Shown here one piece after another: positions 989-62,223 of a DNA stretch of 64,000 nucleotides (positions are counted from its first letter, which is position 1; each line of letters opens with the position of its first letter). Source of the DNA: Macrostomum hystrix (taxonomy: Eukaryota > Animalia > Platyhelminthes); the NCBI GenBank assembly GCA_950097015.1, contig CATNEN010000039.1, forward strand, positions 4,650,001 to 4,714,000. Direction: 5' to 3'. Both the position numbers and the translations under genes were made by a program. The notes under the pieces were generated by a model. It made no database searches. It was not told the origin of the DNA and saw nothing but the letters and a program-made list of their open reading frames with translations.

Positions 989-2086
989 CCTGGGGGCGCT
1001 CGCAGTGGCAGCAGTGGAGTCAGCAAGAAAGGTGAGTTGCTTGACTGCATTTTTTCAGACTTTTTTCATTCAGTATTGTATTTTGGTTGCTAAGTGTACC
1101 AGTGGTCTAATGATGATTCAATGACACACAGCTCACCCTCACAGCTATGGTCATTCAATGACCCACTGCTATGACCCACTGCTAACCCTCACAGCTATGG
1201 TCATTCAATGACCATCTGCTTACTCTCAGAGCTATGATCATTCAATGACCATCTGCTTACTCTCAGAGCTATGATCATTCAATGACCCAGTTCTGATTTA
1301 TGAGCAATCTTTAATCTGTCAGTTAATGATCATCAACCGGACATCGCAGACATCAAAGAGATTGTCTGCCTGCATTTCTTAGAAACTTGATTTCTCTCAA
1401 GCAGCCTTTCTTGTCGTTGGTTTGAGAATAGCCAAATAATCCGCTGCCGTGATCGATTGGCTTTAGATAGTTTAGCTCGTTGAAAGCAGTTGGTGCACAA
1501 TTTCCTGGTCATTGTGAAAGCGTCTGTTCCTGGCACAATGGGGAAGAATGGGGATGGGGTGAATGGGGAAGAAAATCCCATATTGAATAGATAGCGACAG
1601 TTCCGATTGTTCACATTCTGCTTTTCCACTTGAAGCAGACAGTAATAAGTATGATAAGTACCGGTAGCAGTAAAGGACAAAGCAATATGCAGCGGGATCT
1701 TTGAGTGGAGAAGTGGGAAGTGGGAAGTGGGAAGAGGTGAAGAGAGACATTGTGGGATAGAGTTGAATTTTTTCCTTTCGAACATCTGCAGGGAATTTGT
1801 AATTAGCATGCTGCCGCTGCCGCTGCCGCTGCCGCTGCCGCTGCTTGTTAGCGCAGCCCGGTGGAGGCGGCTTCTTAGCACGGGACTCAATGTCTAGCTG
1901 TGAGCTGAGAGCTGCTTCTGGGAGAAAGTTTGCTTTCAGCCTCAGTTGGAAAACTGTACTCATATAAGCTGAGCATGAGTTTGTCTGAGTTGTGTACAGC
2001 TTCTCGTGCAGCTATGCTCAGATAACTGTGAGTCTTGCTGCTACTGTCACTGCAGCACTGTTCGCAACACTTTAGGTGACACTCAG

Positions 2087-9910: not shown

Positions 9911-34077
<24,167 letters not shown>

Positions 34078-56814: not shown

Positions 56815-56856
56815 AGGCATCTCGCAGCTGGTAGCACTCTCTCTCTCTCTCTCTCT

Positions 56857-59800
56857 CTACTGGCCCCTCGGCCAAAGGCCATACAGGGGGCGCGCCAGCG
56901 CGCCCGTTGCCTCCAGGAAATCCAGCACCCTCTCCGGGTGCTCCTGCAGCAGGGACATCGAGCCGATGCCTTCAAAGCAGCGGCGCTCCTCCTCCCATCT
57001 CGGGCAGTCCAGCAGGAAGTGTTCCGTGTTCTCGACCGGGGCTTGGCAATGTGGGCAGACCGGGCTCTCCACGCGGCCCCAGCGGTGTAGGGTGTCCCGA
57101 AGGAAAGGGGCCCGGTTGGCCCGCAGCTGATAAAGGGCCACTTCCTGGTCCCGCCGCCTCCTGTTGCTTGGCGGCAGTGGCCTGCCCCCGCAGCGCCGGT
57201 GAGGGTGCTCCGCCGGAACCTCAGCCTCGTACTGGGCTTTGGCCCGGACGACGCTCTGCCGCCGGACCGCAGCCTGAATGGCACCTGCTGAAGCCCGGGC
57301 GCCTTCCTGAGGCAGCGCGCAGCCTTCCCGGGCCAGCGAGTCGGCTTCCTCGTTCAGGTGCAGACCCGCATGTCCCGGGATCCAGATGACTGTGAGCCGG
57401 TGTTTTTCAGCCAGCTGGTGCAGCAGGGCCACTGCCTGTGCCGCCCCATGGTCGTCCTGACACCGCTCCGGGCGCTGCAGCTTATCGAAGAGCGCGCGGG
57501 AGTCGAAGAGCAGCCAGATGGTACGATGGGTCTGCCCCTCCAGCAACTCCCACGCCGCCTGCAGCCCCGCCGCTGCCGCCGCCGCCTCTGCAGATGTTGA
57601 GCACGTGAGGCGCCCTGTCGCGACTGACCCGTTGACATCCGGGCCCGGTGCCCGCCGCCGGATCACGTAGCCGCCTCCCCCGTTCCGGACTCCTTCCTCC
57701 GCTGCCCCGTCCGTCCAAATTTGCAGGTCAGGCGGGTCCTTCTGGTGCAGGTTGTCCAGAGTGATCAGGGCTTCCTGCCTCCGCCGCCACTCCGGGTCCT
57801 CCCTCTTCGTGTTGGGCGTGCAGACAAACGACACTGCCGTACCCCTCCACGGCCTCGACAGCATGGTCACAGGCACCCGCTCCTCGGGATTATCGGCACT
57901 CCTCCTGCAGCCACAACCCCTCAACACTTGCTTGGCGGTATCCCTCCAGCTGGGCCGCAAACCCCCGCCTCGCGCCTTCAGCCTGCGCGCCGTGCATGGC
58001 TCCTGGGCCAGGCCTCCGAGCGGATGGGCAGCCGGGAACTGCCGGCACCTGGTGAGCAGCGCAGCAGCCTTCTCCTCGCAGATGGGGCCCAGCGACAGCA
58101 GCTCCGCGTCCGTCGTCAGCGCCAGCGAACGCGCCCCTGCCCCGACCACCGTGATGATGCGGGCCGCTTCGGCGTTCAGCCGTTCCAACCTCTGCCGGTG
58201 AGTTGGGGCCAGGAAGCTCCACCAGACCTCCGCGCAGTAGAGTCCAGCCGGCCTGACGTAGCTGCAATACAGCTGCCGCAGCGTACGAGCCTCCGCTCCC
58301 CAGGTGCGGCCTGCAACCGCACGGAGAGCGATGAGCCTGCGGCGAATGGTGGCAGCCGCAGATTGGGCGTGCTCGGCGAAGGTCAGCTGGCTGTCAAGGT
58401 GCACGCCCAGGATCTTGACCGTGCTACTGAGCGCGATCTGCTGGCCGCCGACTGTCAGCTGCACGGGGGCCTTGCCCTTGACCTCCCCCGGGTGCGTGGT
58501 AACCAGTAGGGCTTCGGTCTTGTCGGGCGCCAGCTCGAACTGATGATCCTTGCACCAGGAAGCCACTGCATCGATGGCGGTTTGCGACAGCTCCGCCGCC
58601 TCAGCTGCAGATTTCCCAGACGCGTTGACGGTCAGATCATCCGCATACTGCACTGGCCTGGACTCCGGCGCAGCGGCCTTAACGGCCGCCGGCAACGTGG
58701 AGGTAGCGATGACGAAGAGGAGGGGGGAGAGCGGACTGCCCTGCGGGACGCCTTCCTTGAGGACCCGGCACCGACTCTCAGCGCTCTCCCAGCGAACCGT
58801 GGCACGCCTGTCAGACAGGAAGGCTCTAACCCACCTAAGCACTCTGGCCGGCGCGCGTGCCCGGGCCAACTCACGGAGGGTGCCTAACCGCCAGGTGCGG
58901 TCGAACGCTGCCTTGAAATCCATCGCCGTCACCATCGATCGGTGCATCGGCTGTTCCTGCAGGCTGTCGAACGCGGGCTGCGCAATCTGCGCAACGCAGT
59001 CAATGGTGCTGCGGCCTGTCCTGAACCCCGCCTGCTCGTCTGGGATCAGCCCGTGCAACTCGGCCCACACCGCCAGTCTCCGCTGCACCATGCTTTCCAG
59101 CAGCTTGCCGATGCAGCTCAGCAAGGAGATAGGCCGGTAGGACTTCGGGTCGCCCTTGTTCTTGCCCTTCTTCACAGCCGGCACAATGGTAGCCCGTCTC
59201 CAAGCACTCGGTAGCTTCGCTTCGACCCAGCTCCTGTTGAGCAGGGTAAGCAGCGCTACGAGCCCGCTGGACGGCAGCCGCTTCAGCAACTCGGGGTGGA
59301 CCTCGTCACCGCCCGGGGCCTTGCCCTCACTCCGCCGGATGGCCTCCTGGAGCTCCGCTAGCTGGAATGGTGCTGCCGCCGCGTCCTCATGTTGTCCTGC
59401 TGCTATTGCCCGCCGGACTTCCGCCCTGGCTGCACTCTGGTCCGCCTTCGGGACCCGGAGCCGGCTGGCCTCGGCGTAGGTCGCCGCCGCCATCTCCGCC
59501 TTTTCCTTGTCCGAGTGGGCCGTCCGCCCGTTGTGGACGAGCGGGCTGTCAGGGAGCGGGAGGCGAACGTTGCCGTCGAGCGCCCGGATGACCTGCCAGA
59601 CCTTGGTGTCCGGCGTCCTCGCATCCAGCTTGGAAACGAAGGTCCTCCAGGCCTCCGCCTTAGCTGCCCTGAATGTGCGCTCCGCCTCGATCCTGGCAAG
59701 CCTGTACGCTGCAACCTTCTCTGCGTTCCCGGGGTCGGATCTCAAGCGCTCCAGCGTCTCACGGAGGTTCGCGTGCGCCGCCCTGCACTCAGCGGACCAC

Positions 59801-60988
59801 CAGGACTTGGCCTTGGCGACCGAGCCCCTGGGTATGCTCTTGGCGGCTGACTCCAGAACCATAGAGGTGAAGCTCCTGTTGGCCAGCTCCAGGGAGAAAA
59901 AACGCGAGGCGTCCCAGCCGGCAAAGCGGGAATCAACCTCGGCCTGAAACTTAGGCCAGTCCGCCCTCTTGATGTTCAGGTGCGTGCGGGCCCTTCTGCC
60001 CTGTGGCGCGACGTACTGCACCGTCAGCAGCAGCGGGAGATGGTCGGATCCGACGGGGTCCAGGACCTGCCAGATGGCCTTGCCGGCCCAGCTAGCATGG
60101 CCCAGGGCGACGTCCGGCGCAGTGCCTACTCCAGTCGCAGAGAACCGCGTCGGGGACCCGTCGTTGAGGGCTAGCCATCCTTGCCCAGCCAGCCAGTCGT
60201 CCAGATTCTCTCCCAGGTCGTCCGGGTCGCACTCAGGGTCCCAGCTGCCATGGGCGTTCACGTCCCCGAGAACCAGGTGGTCGGCTCCCCTCGGCCAGCT
60301 GCCGAGATGGAGGTCGCCGTCTCGCTGGTCCCCGTCGCCCAGGCGGACCGGCGGTCTGTAGATGTTGACGATGGTCAGCGGCTTGGTGTTGTTGCTCCGC
60401 ACTCTGACACTCAGACTCTACAAAGCAGCCCCGTCAGGCAGGCGCAGCCCGGGCTCCACTCTCTCATGCTGAATCCCGCGGCGAACAAGGGTCAGGAGAC
60501 CCCCATGGTGCCCTGGGTTGGCACCTCTGTGCACTTGACGCTCTCTTCTGTAGGCCGTGAAGTCCTTGAAGTCGGGGATGGGATCGTTGGGATGGAGATT
60601 CGTCTCTTGCAGCACGGCCACGTCTATCCTGTGAACATCGAGCAGCCGGCTCAACGCCGGTCCCCTCGATTTCAGGCCGTTGAGGTTGAGCTGCAGGATG
60701 TTAAGCGCTCTCTTCACTTGCTGCTGCTCCGGTCGTCTCTCGCCGCCTCTCGGCGGCCCGGGGTTCGACTCAATGTCCCCCGACAGCAGGAGCCGGCGGC
60801 GCGCCCAGTCGGGGTTGGACGCCCGCCCACCCGAAAACCCGACCAGCGGGCGTGGGTGCTGGCGCTGCAGGCAGCACCAGGGGGTGGAAGCACTTGGCGC
60901 GGCTCTGTGCCGCGACGCCGGTCCCCACGAGAAGGGGGCTTCCTTGACCACAGGCCGGTCTCTCCGACCCGTTGCTCGTTGAGCAGCT
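56857..60988 (-). CDS. 2A-APE-RT-RNaseH polyprotein with one in-frame TAG (60418-60420)
   Basis: ORFs 60418-60999 and 56857-60402 are in the same frame: ..DGAAL*SLSVRVRSNN.. The stop probably replaces a GAG (Glu). Confidence 0.88.
60754..60801 (-). other. 2A-like StopGo (ribosome-skipping) peptide RRRLLLSGDIESNPG|P
   Basis: Exact D-[V/I]-E-x-N-P-G-P consensus, immediately upstream of the APE domain. Confidence 0.9.
60886..60970 (-). ncRNA. HDV-like self-cleaving ribozyme at the retrotransposon 5' end
   Basis: The minus strand reads GGTC(P1) AA GGAAGC(P2) C CCC(P3) TTCTCGT(L3) GGG GACC(P1') GG(P1.1) CGT CGCGGC-ACAGA-GCCGCG(P4) CCAA(J4/2) GT GCTTCC(P2'). This is the nested double-pseudoknot order. 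P1 is short (4-5 bp). Confidence 0.7.
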
Positions 60989-62223
60989 GCTGGTAGCACT
61001 CGAGCCCAGCCTTGGATCCTCTGACGTTACCGCGGTCGACAATGTCTGGGCCAGCCTCGGGATCCCCGGCAATGAGACGGCCGACAACATTGCTAAGAGA
61101 GGATCGTCGATGGCGCAAGACACCTTGCTCATTACGATTTCTGCGCGTAATTCGCAGAACTGCGGCGCAGTTCGCCTTCCTTCTGCACTGCCTAGACTGC
61201 TGGCGTGAGACCTACGGCGCGACTGCCAGCGGTGCACCAGCCACGAGCTCGCTGTCCTGGCACTACTGGCAACCTTCCGCCTAAGCCAGCGAAAGATCTC
61301 TCGCGGCAGCAAGAGCGGCTTATCTGTCAGCTGAGCGCCAACCGCTGCCCTGCCTGTAGGGATTTCAAAGCCTCCATCGGTCTCCAAGTGGTGCCAACCT
61401 GCCGTTTCTGAGGCGAAGACGAGGAGTCCGCGACCTACGTGCTGACCAAAACCCCGAGCCAGCGGCTATTTTCGACAAGTGCATCGATTTGATAAAAAAA
61501 ATTCCTTTGGCATTGGCCCACCCTCGCCTCAAGAAGAAGAAGAAGGCATCTCGCGAACTTGTCCTTAGGCGCACGCTTTGACGCTGCCCCTTTTCTGTTG
61601 CAAATAAATCTAATAAATCTTCAAAGTCTGGCTTTGTTCACCAGCCTGGAAATGCAGGCATTGCTTTCCAATTATTGTAAATTAAGTCAGAGATTGGAGA
61701 GACAGAGAAGAAACCCGCGGACTGGGGCAAGAGGCGGAGGCGCGGACAAATGTTACAGGCTTCATGCATTACGCGGTGCTGGGTGTCTGTGGTTGGTCGG
61801 GGTCGGATTCCTACTTGAAATTCATTCACAATCATTCCTTGCGGGACAGAGAGGCGATACGGGTCAGAGGACAGACCCTGCGTGTTGGGGGCAGAGAAGA
61901 ATGCCTAGGCTGGGTTAGGCCTGTGTTGAACAGCCTTCTGTTATTACGTAACACCACTGGCCTATGGAAATCAAGCCCAAACCCCGCATGAGTTGTCATG
62001 GCTTGACGTTGGGTTGTCGTGAATGTACATCGGCACAATCAGAGATTGTACACACGGCCCCGGCAGTTTAGAAGAGGCCCACACGGAGCCCTCACAATGG
62101 ATCGTATGAAAGCGGAGGTTTCTAATCTTGCGTTGGTCGGCACGCAGGGCTCTTATATAGTGTTAGTTAGTCGAGCTAGGCCCCGGGAAACAATCGCGAA
62201 ATCGCATTCGACCGTACACAGTC

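What the first reader, a model, noticed from the sequence alone, without database searches (positions are those of the whole stretch)
60754..60988. Retrotransposon leader combining an HDV-like ribozyme, AUG-less initiation and a 2A skip
Seen: within the first ~235 nt of the element (bounded by its TSD) lie an HDV-like double-pseudoknot fold (60886-60970), two more GC-rich hairpins (about 60859-60880 and 60819-60853) and the 2A motif DIESNPG|P. The frame is open from the 5' end and has no ATG until well past the APE domain (first Met in FTSMVLES). Known: trypanosome L1Tc/Ingi elements carry a 5' HDV-like ribozyme and an N-terminal 2A, and 2A-APE fusions occur in some animal LINEs. Inference: this animal copy carries the full cassette. 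Self-cleavage would free an uncapped RNA from a host transcript, the structured leader would recruit ribosomes without AUG, and 2A would discard the ribozyme-encoded leader peptide so the polyprotein always starts at Pro. The ribozyme and the natural 2A are also possible biotech parts.
Basis: partly seen in the sequence, partly recalled or inferred. Interest (0 to 1): 0.85.

Follow-up and report, generated by a model that had tools for sequence, protein, structure and literature searches.

The report
Flatworm LINE leader: ribozyme relic plus 2A
This is a young but broken jumping gene (LINE) of a macrostomid flatworm whose front end carries a hepatitis-delta-type self-cutting RNA fold, no start codon and a viral-type 2A "skip" peptide; sister families in the genome clearly use the ribozyme to cut their own 5' end, but this copy's family has a damaged ribozyme stem and keeps 35 extra bases in front of it.

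Summary
A TSD-bounded, single-ORF APE-RT-RNase H non-LTR element lies on the minus strand (60986-56839) with a (GA)n tail. It has a canonical 2A (DIESNPG|P, 60777-54) and no ATG anywhere in the leader.

At 60951-60886 there is a 66-nt homolog of an HDV-like ribozyme. Rfam does not detect it. Two sister families in the same genome (57% protein identity) carry the same fold. Across 19 distinct sequences, 93% of cells are paired and 13 of 22 pairs show compensatory changes, including P2, which was not in my model. Their insertions begin exactly at G1 of a 7-bp P1 with a G.U first pair, directly after the TSD. That is the in vivo footprint of self-cleavage.

The window's own family differs. P1 is reduced to 5 bp (-5.5 against about -10 kcal/mol). 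All four independent insertions keep 35 nt upstream of the expected cut. The ribozyme in this copy is therefore probably weak, dead or unused.

The copy also has an in-frame TAG inside APE. Translation without AUG is implied but not shown.

The host is a Macrostomum-like flatworm. This scan had already found the same cassette elsewhere in this genome. The ribozyme+2A pairing is known from trypanosome L1Tc/ingi, so this is a new member of a known kind.

The parts
60989..61000 (-). 5' copy of the target-site duplication, AGTGCTACCAGC. It is followed by two extra nucleotides, AG (60988-60987).
   Evidence: an identical 12-mer lies at 56838-56827.
56839..60986 (-). Whole family-A non-LTR retrotransposon copy, 4148 nt, single ORF, no ORF1.
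   Evidence: A 99.4% identical full-length copy is L040. L039 is an internally deleted copy.
60952..60986 (-). Family-A-specific 35-nt 5' extension. It forms two small hairpins (60985-60973 and 60969-60953). It is absent from sister families B and C.
   Evidence: It is present in all A insertions, including a metatranscriptome contig with a different flank.
60886..60951 (-). HDV-like ribozyme homolog.
- P1 5' strand: 60950-46, weak, 5 bp including a U.G pair
- J1/2: AA
- P2: 60943-38 with 60891-86
- P3: 60936-34 with 60926-24
- L3: 60933-27
- P1': 60923-17
- J1/4: GU
- P4: 60914-09 with 60903-898
- J4/2: 60897-92, with the candidate catalytic C at 60897
   Evidence: CM hit of 60.3 bits, E 3e-14. 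Covariation on 19 distinct sequences. P1 energies.
60859..60880 (-). Conserved 9-bp hairpin just 3' of the ribozyme. An in-frame CUG (60870-60868) sits in its loop. In family C the in-frame AUG lies in its 3' arm.
   Evidence: 4 of 9 pairs have changes on both sides among families.
60795..60856 (-). Further conserved structured leader. It contains the GGGUUUUCGGGUGGG block, the family-A helix 60853-46 with 60826-19, and a conserved helix at about 60827-60795.
   Evidence: Some compensatory pairs occur in the distal helix. The middle helix is conserved but does not covary.
60754..60816 (-). 2A/StopGo peptide NPDWARRRLLLSGDIESNPG|P. The predicted break lies between Gly (60759-57) and Pro (60756-54).
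   Evidence: The motif is conserved in families B (DIEQNPGP) and C (DVEPNPGP) and in metagenomic relative P0002 (DVHPNPGP).
60031..60696 (-). APE endonuclease domain, interrupted by an in-frame TAG at 60420-60418.
   Evidence: Pfam PF03372 and PF14529. The stop codon is seen.
58396..59157 (-). Reverse transcriptase domain.
   Evidence: PF00078, E 5e-36.
57319..57726 (-). RNase H domain.
   Evidence: PF00075, E 4e-11.
57001..57105 (-). C-terminal CCHC zinc knuckle (zf-RVT-like).
   Evidence: PF13966, E 6e-4, below the curated cut-off. The motif CPHC...HFLLDCP is visible.
56839..56858 (-). (GA)n 3' tail, which overlaps the TAG stop codon (56859-56857).
56827..56838 (-). 3' copy of the target-site duplication.

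Best explanation
Shown:
- The window holds a recent, nonsense-mutated copy of a single-ORF LINE (2A-APE-RT-RNase H-zinc knuckle, (GA)n tail) of a Macrostomum-like flatworm.
- Its leader descends from a working 5' module shared by at least three families in this genome. That module is a compact (about 66 nt) HDV-like self-cleaving ribozyme, then conserved hairpins, then a 2A peptide.

Inferred for sister families B and C:
- The ribozyme cuts the co-transcript exactly at G1 of P1, so every full-length insertion starts there.

Inferred for the window's family A:
- The catalytic core is kept (P2, P3, L3, P4, J4/2 C).
- The 5' strand of P1 has decayed to 5 bp, without the G.U first pair.
- A 35-nt hairpin-forming extension has become part of the element.
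- The RNA that retrotransposes is therefore not cut at the homologous site. The ribozyme here is weak, dead or bypassed, and the 5' end at 60986 is set by something else, most simply a transcription start.
- This family moved recently with a leader that has no AUG at all, so translation must begin at a non-AUG codon or by structure-driven entry. One candidate is the in-frame CUG at 60870-68 in the loop of the conserved hairpin, 38 codons before the 2A proline.
- 2A would then release the short leader peptide, so that the enzyme polyprotein starts at Pro.

Ribozyme fold:
- I threaded the fold by hand and confirmed it with a covariance model built only from families B and C.
- The model hits the window at 60.3 bits, E 3e-14, and gives 21 hits in the genome.
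- On 19 distinct sequences, 93.3% of cells are paired, against 39-50% when partners are slid.
- 13 of 22 pairs changed on both sides, and 0 of 500 shuffles reached this.
- P2 was not in the model and still shows 3 compensatory pairs.

In vivo cleavage in B and C:
- Eleven insertions have unrelated flanks right up to G1.
- The TSD abuts G1 in L041, L042 and L043.

Family A is different:
- P1 is -5.5 kcal/mol, against -7.8 to -11.2 in the four B/C-type copies measured (-9.5 and -10.0 in the B and C reference copies).
- The CM needs a deletion or bulge in P1 to align it.
- The window, L039, L040 and an RNA-library contig with a different flank all carry 60986-60952.
- No A copy starts at 60949-60955.

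Recent activity without AUG:
- A copies are 99.4-100% identical with intact TSDs.
- Their leaders contain no ATG.

Literature:
- P1 mismatches are reported as uncommon in HDV-like ribozymes and are offered as a possible reason for the lack of in vitro cleavage (PMC3774820).
Against: - No cleavage, 5'-end or translation data exist for this organism. The only runs available were contigs, which cannot show RNA ends.
- A 5-bp P1 might still cleave some fraction of transcripts. Four insertions only bound cleavage efficiency to below roughly one half.
- Strain variants in the ribozyme region (60906, 60896) fall in unpaired positions. That could mean the fold is still under selection in family A.
- Rfam's HDV-type models give no hit.
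- No fully intact family-A copy is present in the assembly.
- The start codon is a guess.
Confidence: 0.62

Rival explanations
1. The family-A ribozyme is active and cuts at the homologous site (about 60951-60949). This frees an uncapped RNA that is translated without AUG and trimmed by 2A. The copies with the 35-nt extension come from the minority of uncut transcripts.
For: - The whole catalytic core is conserved.
- The variants seen in other strains lie in unpaired positions.
- Five contiguous P1 pairs remain.
- Sister families clearly use the ribozyme.
Against: - Four of four independent full-length A insertions keep the extension, and none starts at the cut site.
- With cis-preference, the translated RNA is the one that is copied.
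- P1 lacks the G.U first pair and is about 4-5 kcal/mol weaker.
- The extension folds into hairpins that sequester the bases next to P1.
Confidence: 0.2
2. In family A the P1 5' strand has moved to the very 5' end (60987/60986-60981, (G)CUGCUC pairing with P1' GACCGGC). The 35-nt extension has become a structured J1/2 insert, as in some R2 ribozymes. Cleavage at 60986/60987 would then define the observed 5' end.
For: - The window copy pairs 6 of 7 at exactly the element's first bases.
- R2 ribozymes tolerate J1/2 inserts of tens to hundreds of nucleotides and have shifted their cleavage sites in this way (PMC3774820).
- All A insertions start at this point.
Against: - There is a central C.C mismatch. 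The duplex is only -4.0 kcal/mol in the window and -1.5 in the other copies, which have C at 60987.
- Background 7-mers reach 6/7 at 1.3% and 5/7 at 7% of positions in this element, so the match is not clearly more than chance.
- L040 carries 30 further upstream nucleotides.
Confidence: 0.1
3. The leader is translated conventionally. A capped transcript from an internal promoter starting at 60986 is scanned to a near-cognate codon. The ribozyme-like sequence is only an inherited relic with no present role, and the conserved hairpins serve RNA recognition by the element's own protein rather than ribosome entry.
For: - The 5' end at 60986 is reproducible and not explained by the ribozyme.
- Family C and relative P0002 use an in-frame AUG 35-36 codons before the 2A break. 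This suggests an ordinary short leader ORF as the ancestral state.
- In-frame CUG codons lie at a similar distance in A.
Against: - No promoter evidence is available.
- Family C has three out-of-frame AUGs before its in-frame one, which fits poorly with simple scanning.
- This rival overlaps with the best explanation and differs from it only in cap-dependent scanning versus structure-driven entry.
Confidence: 0.3
4. The HDV-like fold is a chance arrangement of GC-rich helices and not a ribozyme at all.
For: - There is no Rfam hit.
- The whole-leader MFE is not unusual, with z = -1.2.
Against: - Covariation in all four helices, including the pseudoknotted P2.
- A conserved L3 and J4/2 C.
- Insertions that begin exactly at G1, next to their TSDs.
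- A CM E-value of 3e-14 in the window.
Confidence: 0.02

Closest known systems
L1Tc / ingi non-LTR retrotransposons of trypanosomatids (Pr77/L1TcRz plus N-terminal 2A)
   Same: - A single ORF with APE-RT-RNase H and no ORF1.
- An HDV-like ribozyme in the first ~77 nt that cleaves at +1 (PMC3185411, PMC3383444, PMC4035085).
- A 2A directly in front of APE (PMC3708506).
- A proposed uncapped RNA with a structured leader and cap-independent translation (PMC3383444).
   Different: - The host is an animal (flatworm).
- The tail is a microsatellite, not poly(A).
- The ribozyme is more compact (66 nt), and I did not test it for sequence similarity to Pr77.
- None of the named proteins among the 92 listed relatives is from a trypanosomatid; most of the 92 carry no name.
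- In the window's family the ribozyme no longer defines the 5' end, and no AUG is present.
HDV-like ribozymes at the 5' ends of animal non-LTR elements (R2, R4, R6, SART, Baggins, RTE; Eickbush & Eickbush 2010; Ruminski et al. 2011)
   Same: - A nested double pseudoknot with a 7-bp P1.
- Cleavage that creates the element's exact 5' end from a co-transcript.
- An ORF open to the 5' end without an obvious AUG.
- By my recollection of Ruminski et al., whose paper is not held in the library, such ribozymes were reported to promote translation initiation.
   Different: - Those elements carry no 2A.
- R2 uses an REL endonuclease and a specific target.
- Here the fold is followed by a 2A and belongs to an RNase H-bearing APE element that inserts at varied sites.
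2A-bearing APE-type non-LTR elements of animals (Rex1, Crack, L2, CR1, Ingi clades; Odon et al. 2013, PMC3708506)
   Same: - A canonical D(V/I)ExNPGP in the N-terminal region of the single ORF, immediately upstream of APE.
- Loss of ORF1.
   Different: - That paper never mentions a ribozyme (0 occurrences of the word) and lists no flatworm.
- By my own knowledge, only the Ingi clade among those listed has RNase H.
Twister-variant ribozymes in Schistosoma mansoni non-LTR retrotransposons (PMC8501958)
   Same: A flatworm LINE that uses a small self-cleaving ribozyme for processing.
   Different: - A different ribozyme class.
- A different flatworm order.
- No 2A is described.

Membership tests
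HDV-like self-cleaving ribozyme | Nested double-pseudoknot order: P1-J1/2-P2-P3-L3-P3'-P1'-J1/4-P4-J4/2-P2'. | tested here: met
   - All segments are placed in the window at 60951-60886.
- On 19 distinct genomic sequences, 93.3% of cells are paired and 13 of 22 pairs are compensatory.
- P2 was not part of the model and also covaries.
HDV-like self-cleaving ribozyme | P1 of about 7 bp that begins at the cleavage site, usually with a G.U wobble. | tested here: not met
   - Window copy: only 5 contiguous pairs, with a U.G pair at the outer end and -5.5 kcal/mol.
- The feature is met in families B (GUCGGUC/GACCGAU) and C (GCCUGUC/GACAGGU).
HDV-like self-cleaving ribozyme | Catalytic cytosine as the first base of J4/2, a 3-bp P3 and a 7-nt C-rich L3 able to form P1.1. 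| tested here: met
   - C60897 follows P4.
- P3 is CCC/GGG.
- L3 is UUCUCGU, and G60916 is available for P1.1.
- These columns are conserved across families.
HDV-like self-cleaving ribozyme | The element's or RNA's 5' end coincides with the predicted cleavage site. | tested here: not met
   - Family A: all four insertions begin 35 nt or more upstream.
- Families B and C: met. The TSD abuts G1 in L041-L043, and 11 insertions have unrelated flanks up to G1.
HDV-like self-cleaving ribozyme | Mg2+-dependent self-scission that is abolished by mutating the J4/2 C. | not testable with these tools
   This needs in vitro transcription and cleavage assays.
HDV-like self-cleaving ribozyme | A match to a curated Rfam HDV-type model. 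| tested here: not met
   - No HDV, CPEB3 or drz family appears even at E<=10 in 60500-61300.
- From my own knowledge, these ribozymes are usually found by structure descriptors rather than sequence models, so this weighs little.
2A / StopGo recoding peptide | C-terminal motif D(V/I)ExNPG|P. | tested here: met
   DIESNPGP at 60777-60754. It is conserved as DIEQNPGP and DVEPNPGP in the sister families.
2A / StopGo recoding peptide | A translated upstream context of about 18 or more residues with a hydrophobic/Leu-rich stretch. | tested here: inconclusive
   - The sequence RRRLLLSG precedes the motif and the frame is open.
- Where translation starts, and so whether the context is translated, is unknown because there is no AUG.
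2A / StopGo recoding peptide | Separation of the upstream and downstream products during translation. | not testable with these tools
   This needs a dual-reporter assay.
Ingi clade of non-LTR retrotransposons | The RT groups with Ingi/L1Tc in a phylogeny against reference clades. | not testable with these tools
   - No reference RT set was available.
- The named relatives found are unclassified animal proteins.
Ingi clade of non-LTR retrotransposons | A single ORF ordered APE-RT-RNase H, with no ORF1. | tested here: met
   Pfam domains appear in that order, and the ORF starts at the element's 5' end within the TSDs.

The most novel reading that the evidence does not exclude
Family A would be a natural 'after the ribozyme' state. 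It is a LINE lineage that recently stayed mobile after losing ribozyme-defined 5' processing and after losing every AUG in its leader. On this reading it relies on a newly acquired 35-nt 5' module (a promoter, or a relocated P1) and on non-AUG or structure-driven initiation feeding a 2A.

Together with sister families B (ribozyme, no AUG) and C (ribozyme, AUG), one animal genome would then hold three states of the same cassette. That would make the roles of ribozyme, start codon and 2A in LINE translation directly comparable.
Probability: 0.3. Interest if true: 0.6.

Novelty: new member of a known kind. Interest (0 to 1): 0.45.

Why it matters
Each part is already known. HDV-like ribozymes head many animal LINEs, and 2A peptides head many others. 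In the literature I could search, the two together are described only for trypanosome L1Tc/ingi. Finding the pairing in a flatworm, in several diverged families with clear covariation and exact 5' ends, has two consequences. It extends that expression strategy to animals. It also supplies compact natural parts: a 66-nt ribozyme and several 2A variants.

This window adds a cautionary and useful contrast. The same genome holds a young family in which the ribozyme stem has decayed, yet the element kept moving without any AUG. That offers a natural comparison for asking what the ribozyme and the structured leader actually contribute to LINE translation.

The value is tempered in two ways. This scan has already reported the cassette at other loci of this genome. 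Nothing here is shown biochemically.

Tried and rejected
- Rfam scan of 60500-61300 at E<=10 gave only a chance lncRNA match.
- Whole-leader MFE folding is not unusual, with z = -1.2. Nested folding cannot see the pseudoknot, so this says little.
I rejected it.
- A relocated P1 at the element's first bases pairs 6/7 in the window but 5/7 in the other copies, which is near background. I kept it only as a low-probability rival.
- I looked for a master copy carrying L040's extra 30 nt and found it only in L040 itself.
- Cross-species support:
  - The single metagenome scan returned only 24-41% identical relatives (mostly 24-32%), with no R1 ribozyme hit. One of them, L059, has a distant 2A (DVESNPGP).
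- RNA evidence: all the runs were contigs, with no raw reads, so RNA starts, strand and level cannot be read.
- 'Frame open through the ribozyme' is not evidence of translation. Family A reads the ribozyme in a different frame from B and C, and about 30 stop-free codons are expected by chance in GC-rich sequence.
- Ruminski 2011 and Kojima 2011 are not held in the library. What I say of them is from memory.
- ARAGORN found no tRNA near the outlying hit L038.
Full report
**What is there**

On the minus strand, a 4148-nt non-LTR retrotransposon runs from 60986 to 56839.

- It is bounded by a perfect 12-bp target-site duplication, AGTGCTACCAGC, at 61000-60989 and 56838-56827.
- Two extra bases (AG) sit at the 5' junction.
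- It ends in a (GA)n tail that overlaps its TAG stop.
- One reading frame covers it. Pfam finds APE (PF03372/PF14529), RT (PF00078, E 5e-36), RNase H (PF00075, E 4e-11) and a weak zf-RVT zinc knuckle, in that order.
- There is no room for an ORF1.
- The frame is interrupted once, by an in-frame TAG at 60420-60418 inside APE.
- The 2A motif G-D-I-E-S-N-P-G|P is encoded at 60780-60754 and is preceded by RRRLLLS.
- No ATG occurs in any frame in 60988-60754. The first in-frame Met is in FTSMVLES, past APE.

**The ribozyme**

Rfam finds nothing HDV-like, even at E<=10. Nested MFE folding is unremarkable, with z = -1.2. By hand, the sequence threads onto the HDV topology as follows:

| Element | Window coordinates | Sequence |
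|---|---|---|
| P2 | 60943-38 with 60891-86 | GGAAGC/GCUUCC |
| P3 | 60936-34 with 60926-24 | |
| L3 | 60933-27 | UUCUCGU |
| P1' | 60923-17 | GACCGGC |
| J1/4 | 60916-15 | GU |
| P4 | 60914-09 with 60903-898 | |
| J4/2 | 60897-92 | CCAAGU |

The decisive evidence comes from the rest of the genome.

- A DNA search found the window's family (A: two more full-length-type copies and two 5'-truncated ones, 97.5-100% identical) and two diverged families, B and C, whose leaders are 72-76% identical. Family C's protein is 57% identical to A's.
- In B the ribozyme reads GUCGGUC-AAC-GGAGGC-C-CCC-UUCCCGA-GGG-GACCGAU-GU-CGCAG-CUUUA-CUGCG-CAAAGU-GCCUCC, 66 nt.
- Family C has GCCUGUC/GACAGGU for P1, CGGAGC/GCUCCG for P2 and CACAGA/UCUGUG for P4.
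- I built a covariance model from B and C only, with P1, P3 and P4 as the nested structure.
  - It finds 21 places in the genome.
  - It hits the window at 60952-60884 with 60.3 bits, E 3e-14. The next window hit has E 0.5.
- I counted the full pseudoknotted structure on the 19 distinct sequences.
  - 93.3% of cells are standard pairs, against 39-50% when the 3' partners are slid by 1-3 columns.
  - 13 of 22 pairs have changes on both sides, and 0 of 500 shuffles reached the observed values.
  - P2 was not in the model and has three compensatory pairs.
  - The first P1 pair is G.U in 13 of the 19.

**In vivo footprint**

- In families B and C, homology between copies begins exactly at G1, and the flanks are unrelated right up to it in eleven insertions.
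- For three copies I fetched both ends. In each, the duplication abuts G1.
  - L041 (B): TSD CTGCT(T/C)GAGC, (CAA)n tail.
  - L042 (C): TSD CTGCACCATCGT, (CA)n tail.
  - L043 (C): TSD CTTACTCGGGT.
- This is the pattern known from R2 and L1Tc, where self-cleavage creates the element's 5' end (PMC3774820, PMC3185411).
- I take it as strong indirect evidence that the B and C ribozymes cut in vivo.

**The window's own family is different**

- *P1 has decayed.* All family-A copies read ...GCC-UGU-GGUC where B has GUCGGUC. The model can only align this with a deletion or bulge.
  - Five contiguous pairs remain, with a U.G pair rather than a G.U pair at the outer end.
  - The duplex is -5.5 kcal/mol, against -7.8 to -11.2 in the B/C-type copies measured (-9.5 and -10.0 in the B and C reference copies).
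  - P1 mismatches are uncommon in HDV-like ribozymes and have been offered as a possible reason for loss of in vitro cleavage (PMC3774820).
- *Every A insertion keeps 35 nt upstream of the expected cut (60986-60952).* These bases fold into two small hairpins, one of which sequesters the bases next to P1.
  - Window: TSD + AG + CUGCUC...
  - L039: TSD GGACGGAGATGCG + C + CUGCUC... This copy is internally deleted.
  - L040: TSD CTCAGGTACC + 30 further nt + CUGCUC... This copy is 99.4% identical over 4144 nt.
  - A contig from a marine metatranscriptome library matches 60795-60986 and then continues into a different flank.
- *No A copy begins at 60949-60955.*
- If cut RNA were as competent as uncut RNA, four out of four uncut limits cleavage to below about one half.
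- A possible relocated P1 at the element's first bases pairs 6/7 in the window but only 5/7 in the other copies, which is close to background. I keep it as a minor rival.
- What fixes the 5' end at 60986 is unexplained. A transcription start is the simplest guess.

**The rest of the leader**

- The 9-bp hairpin at 60880-60859 is conserved, with four pairs changed on both sides among families.
- A distal helix at about 60827-60795 has a few compensatory pairs.
- The A-specific 8-bp helix 60853-46 with 60826-19 is not conserved as such.
- From about GF(S/L)GG onward the peptide is conserved up to the 2A: DIESNPGP in A, DIEQNPGP in B, DVEPNPGP in C.
- Upstream of that, the families differ by 1- and 5-nt indels.
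  - Family A reads the ribozyme in a different frame from B and C.
  - Whatever peptide the ribozyme might encode is therefore not conserved.
  - The open frame through it is not evidence of translation.
- Family C has an in-frame AUG in the 3' arm of the conserved hairpin, 36 codons before the 2A proline, but three out-of-frame AUGs come first.
- The metagenomic relative P0002 (45% identity) starts with Met 35 residues before its DVHPNPG|P.
- Families A and B have no in-frame AUG at all.
- Family A moved very recently, with near-identical copies and intact TSDs. An AUG-less leader must therefore have been translatable.
- An in-frame CUG at 60870-68 in the hairpin loop, 38 codons before the proline, is a candidate start. 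This is inference only.

**Host and earlier findings**

- The element is 64% GC in a 45-50% GC background.
- An intronless HSP70 of the same assembly is 95% identical to Macrostomum lignano HSP70, and the best hit from any other named species is 79% identical. The genome (220 Mb, 42 contigs) is therefore a macrostomid flatworm. This confirms 'animal', and 'flatworm' as earlier notes had it.
- Earlier notes of this scan describe the same ribozyme + 2A cassette at other loci of this genome. Three of them were followed up: s1-286118, s1-300482 and s1-846771.
- The 183-bp stub of s1-846771 seems to be my L007/L023, but I could not check its coordinates.

**Comparison with the literature**

- The closest described system is L1Tc/ingi of trypanosomatids.
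  - It has an HDV-like ribozyme in the first 77 nt and a 2A before APE.
  - It has a single ORF with RNase H.
  - An uncapped RNA with an IRES-like leader has been proposed (PMC3185411, PMC3383444, PMC4035085, PMC3708506).
- HDV-like ribozymes head many animal LINEs (R2, RTE, Baggins and others: PMC3774820; Ruminski et al. 2011, cited from memory because the paper is not held).
- 2A peptides head many animal APE-type LINEs, but Odon et al. mention no ribozyme and no flatworm.
- In Schistosoma a different ribozyme, a twister variant, serves LINE processing (PMC8501958).
- My literature searches found no paper that joins an HDV-like ribozyme and a 2A in an animal LINE, and nothing on Macrostomum.
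- I therefore class this as a new member of a known kind.

**Limits**

- The metagenome scan gave only distant relatives without the ribozyme.
- No raw RNA reads were available.
- The RT clade could not be placed for lack of reference sequences.
The copies are described only as found.

**Verdict**

It probably does not hold for this copy's ribozyme.
- AUG-less initiation and 2A skipping are plausible but untested.

Noticed in passing
L040 (G000:C39:17505600-17510500), 5' junction: This family-A copy carries 30 extra nucleotides (AGTTCGTACCGACCACAAGGCCCTGACGGC) between its TSD and the usual 5' end. The stretch occurs nowhere else in the assembly. It may be a 5' transduction from an unassembled master copy, or junction filler.
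   Followed up: partly
L004 (upstream of the truncated A leader) and L014/L025 (downstream of a truncated B leader): A different repeat containing CTTGACTTAGC(T/G)GCAGGG... abuts broken LINE leaders at two unrelated loci. This suggests another mobile element, or a recombination partner that joins these leaders.
   Followed up: no
L038 = G000:C1:21385019-21388083, hit at 1501-1565 (minus strand): - This is a 31.6-bit hit of the ribozyme model in AT-rich DNA.
- It has a perfect 7-bp P1 with a G.U first pair, a covarying P3 (GCC/GGC), the same L3 and a 3-bp P4.
- It has no clear P2 and no LINE behind it.
- ARAGORN finds no tRNA nearby.
- It may be a separate minimal HDV-like ribozyme, or chance.
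   Followed up: partly
L034/L035 = G000:C5:3555465-3555532 and 3532515-3532582: Two near-identical ribozyme-like sequences (47-48 bits) lie 23 kb apart with identical flanks and no 2A or ORF behind them. They look like a segmentally duplicated solo ribozyme relic.
   Followed up: no
L007/L023 = G000:C1:2712970-2713148: A 183-bp family-B stub (ribozyme through the 2A motif) is flanked by a 22-bp duplication, ACCAGCATGGTGACAGAGTCGT. It keeps the 5' end rather than the 3' end, which is unusual for target-primed reverse transcription.
   Followed up: partly
G000:C33:3867893-3873260, 4230542-4232353 and 4642505-4644316: Four intronless, almost identical HSP70 genes lie on one contig, and two of them form a head-to-head pair. 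Their products are 95% identical to Macrostomum lignano HSP70.
   Followed up: partly
window 12327-12397: A (CTG)n-rich stretch gives a spurious weak hit (E 0.5) to the ribozyme model. It is a simple repeat, not a ribozyme.
   Followed up: no
L043 (G000:C1:9904600-9909700), C-terminal end of the ORF: This family-C copy has a 1371-codon open frame starting at the element's 5' end. Its C-terminus departs from family A inside the CCHC zinc-knuckle motif (CPHCNAPRRRH...), which probably reflects a frameshift. It is therefore not fully intact either.
   Followed up: partly
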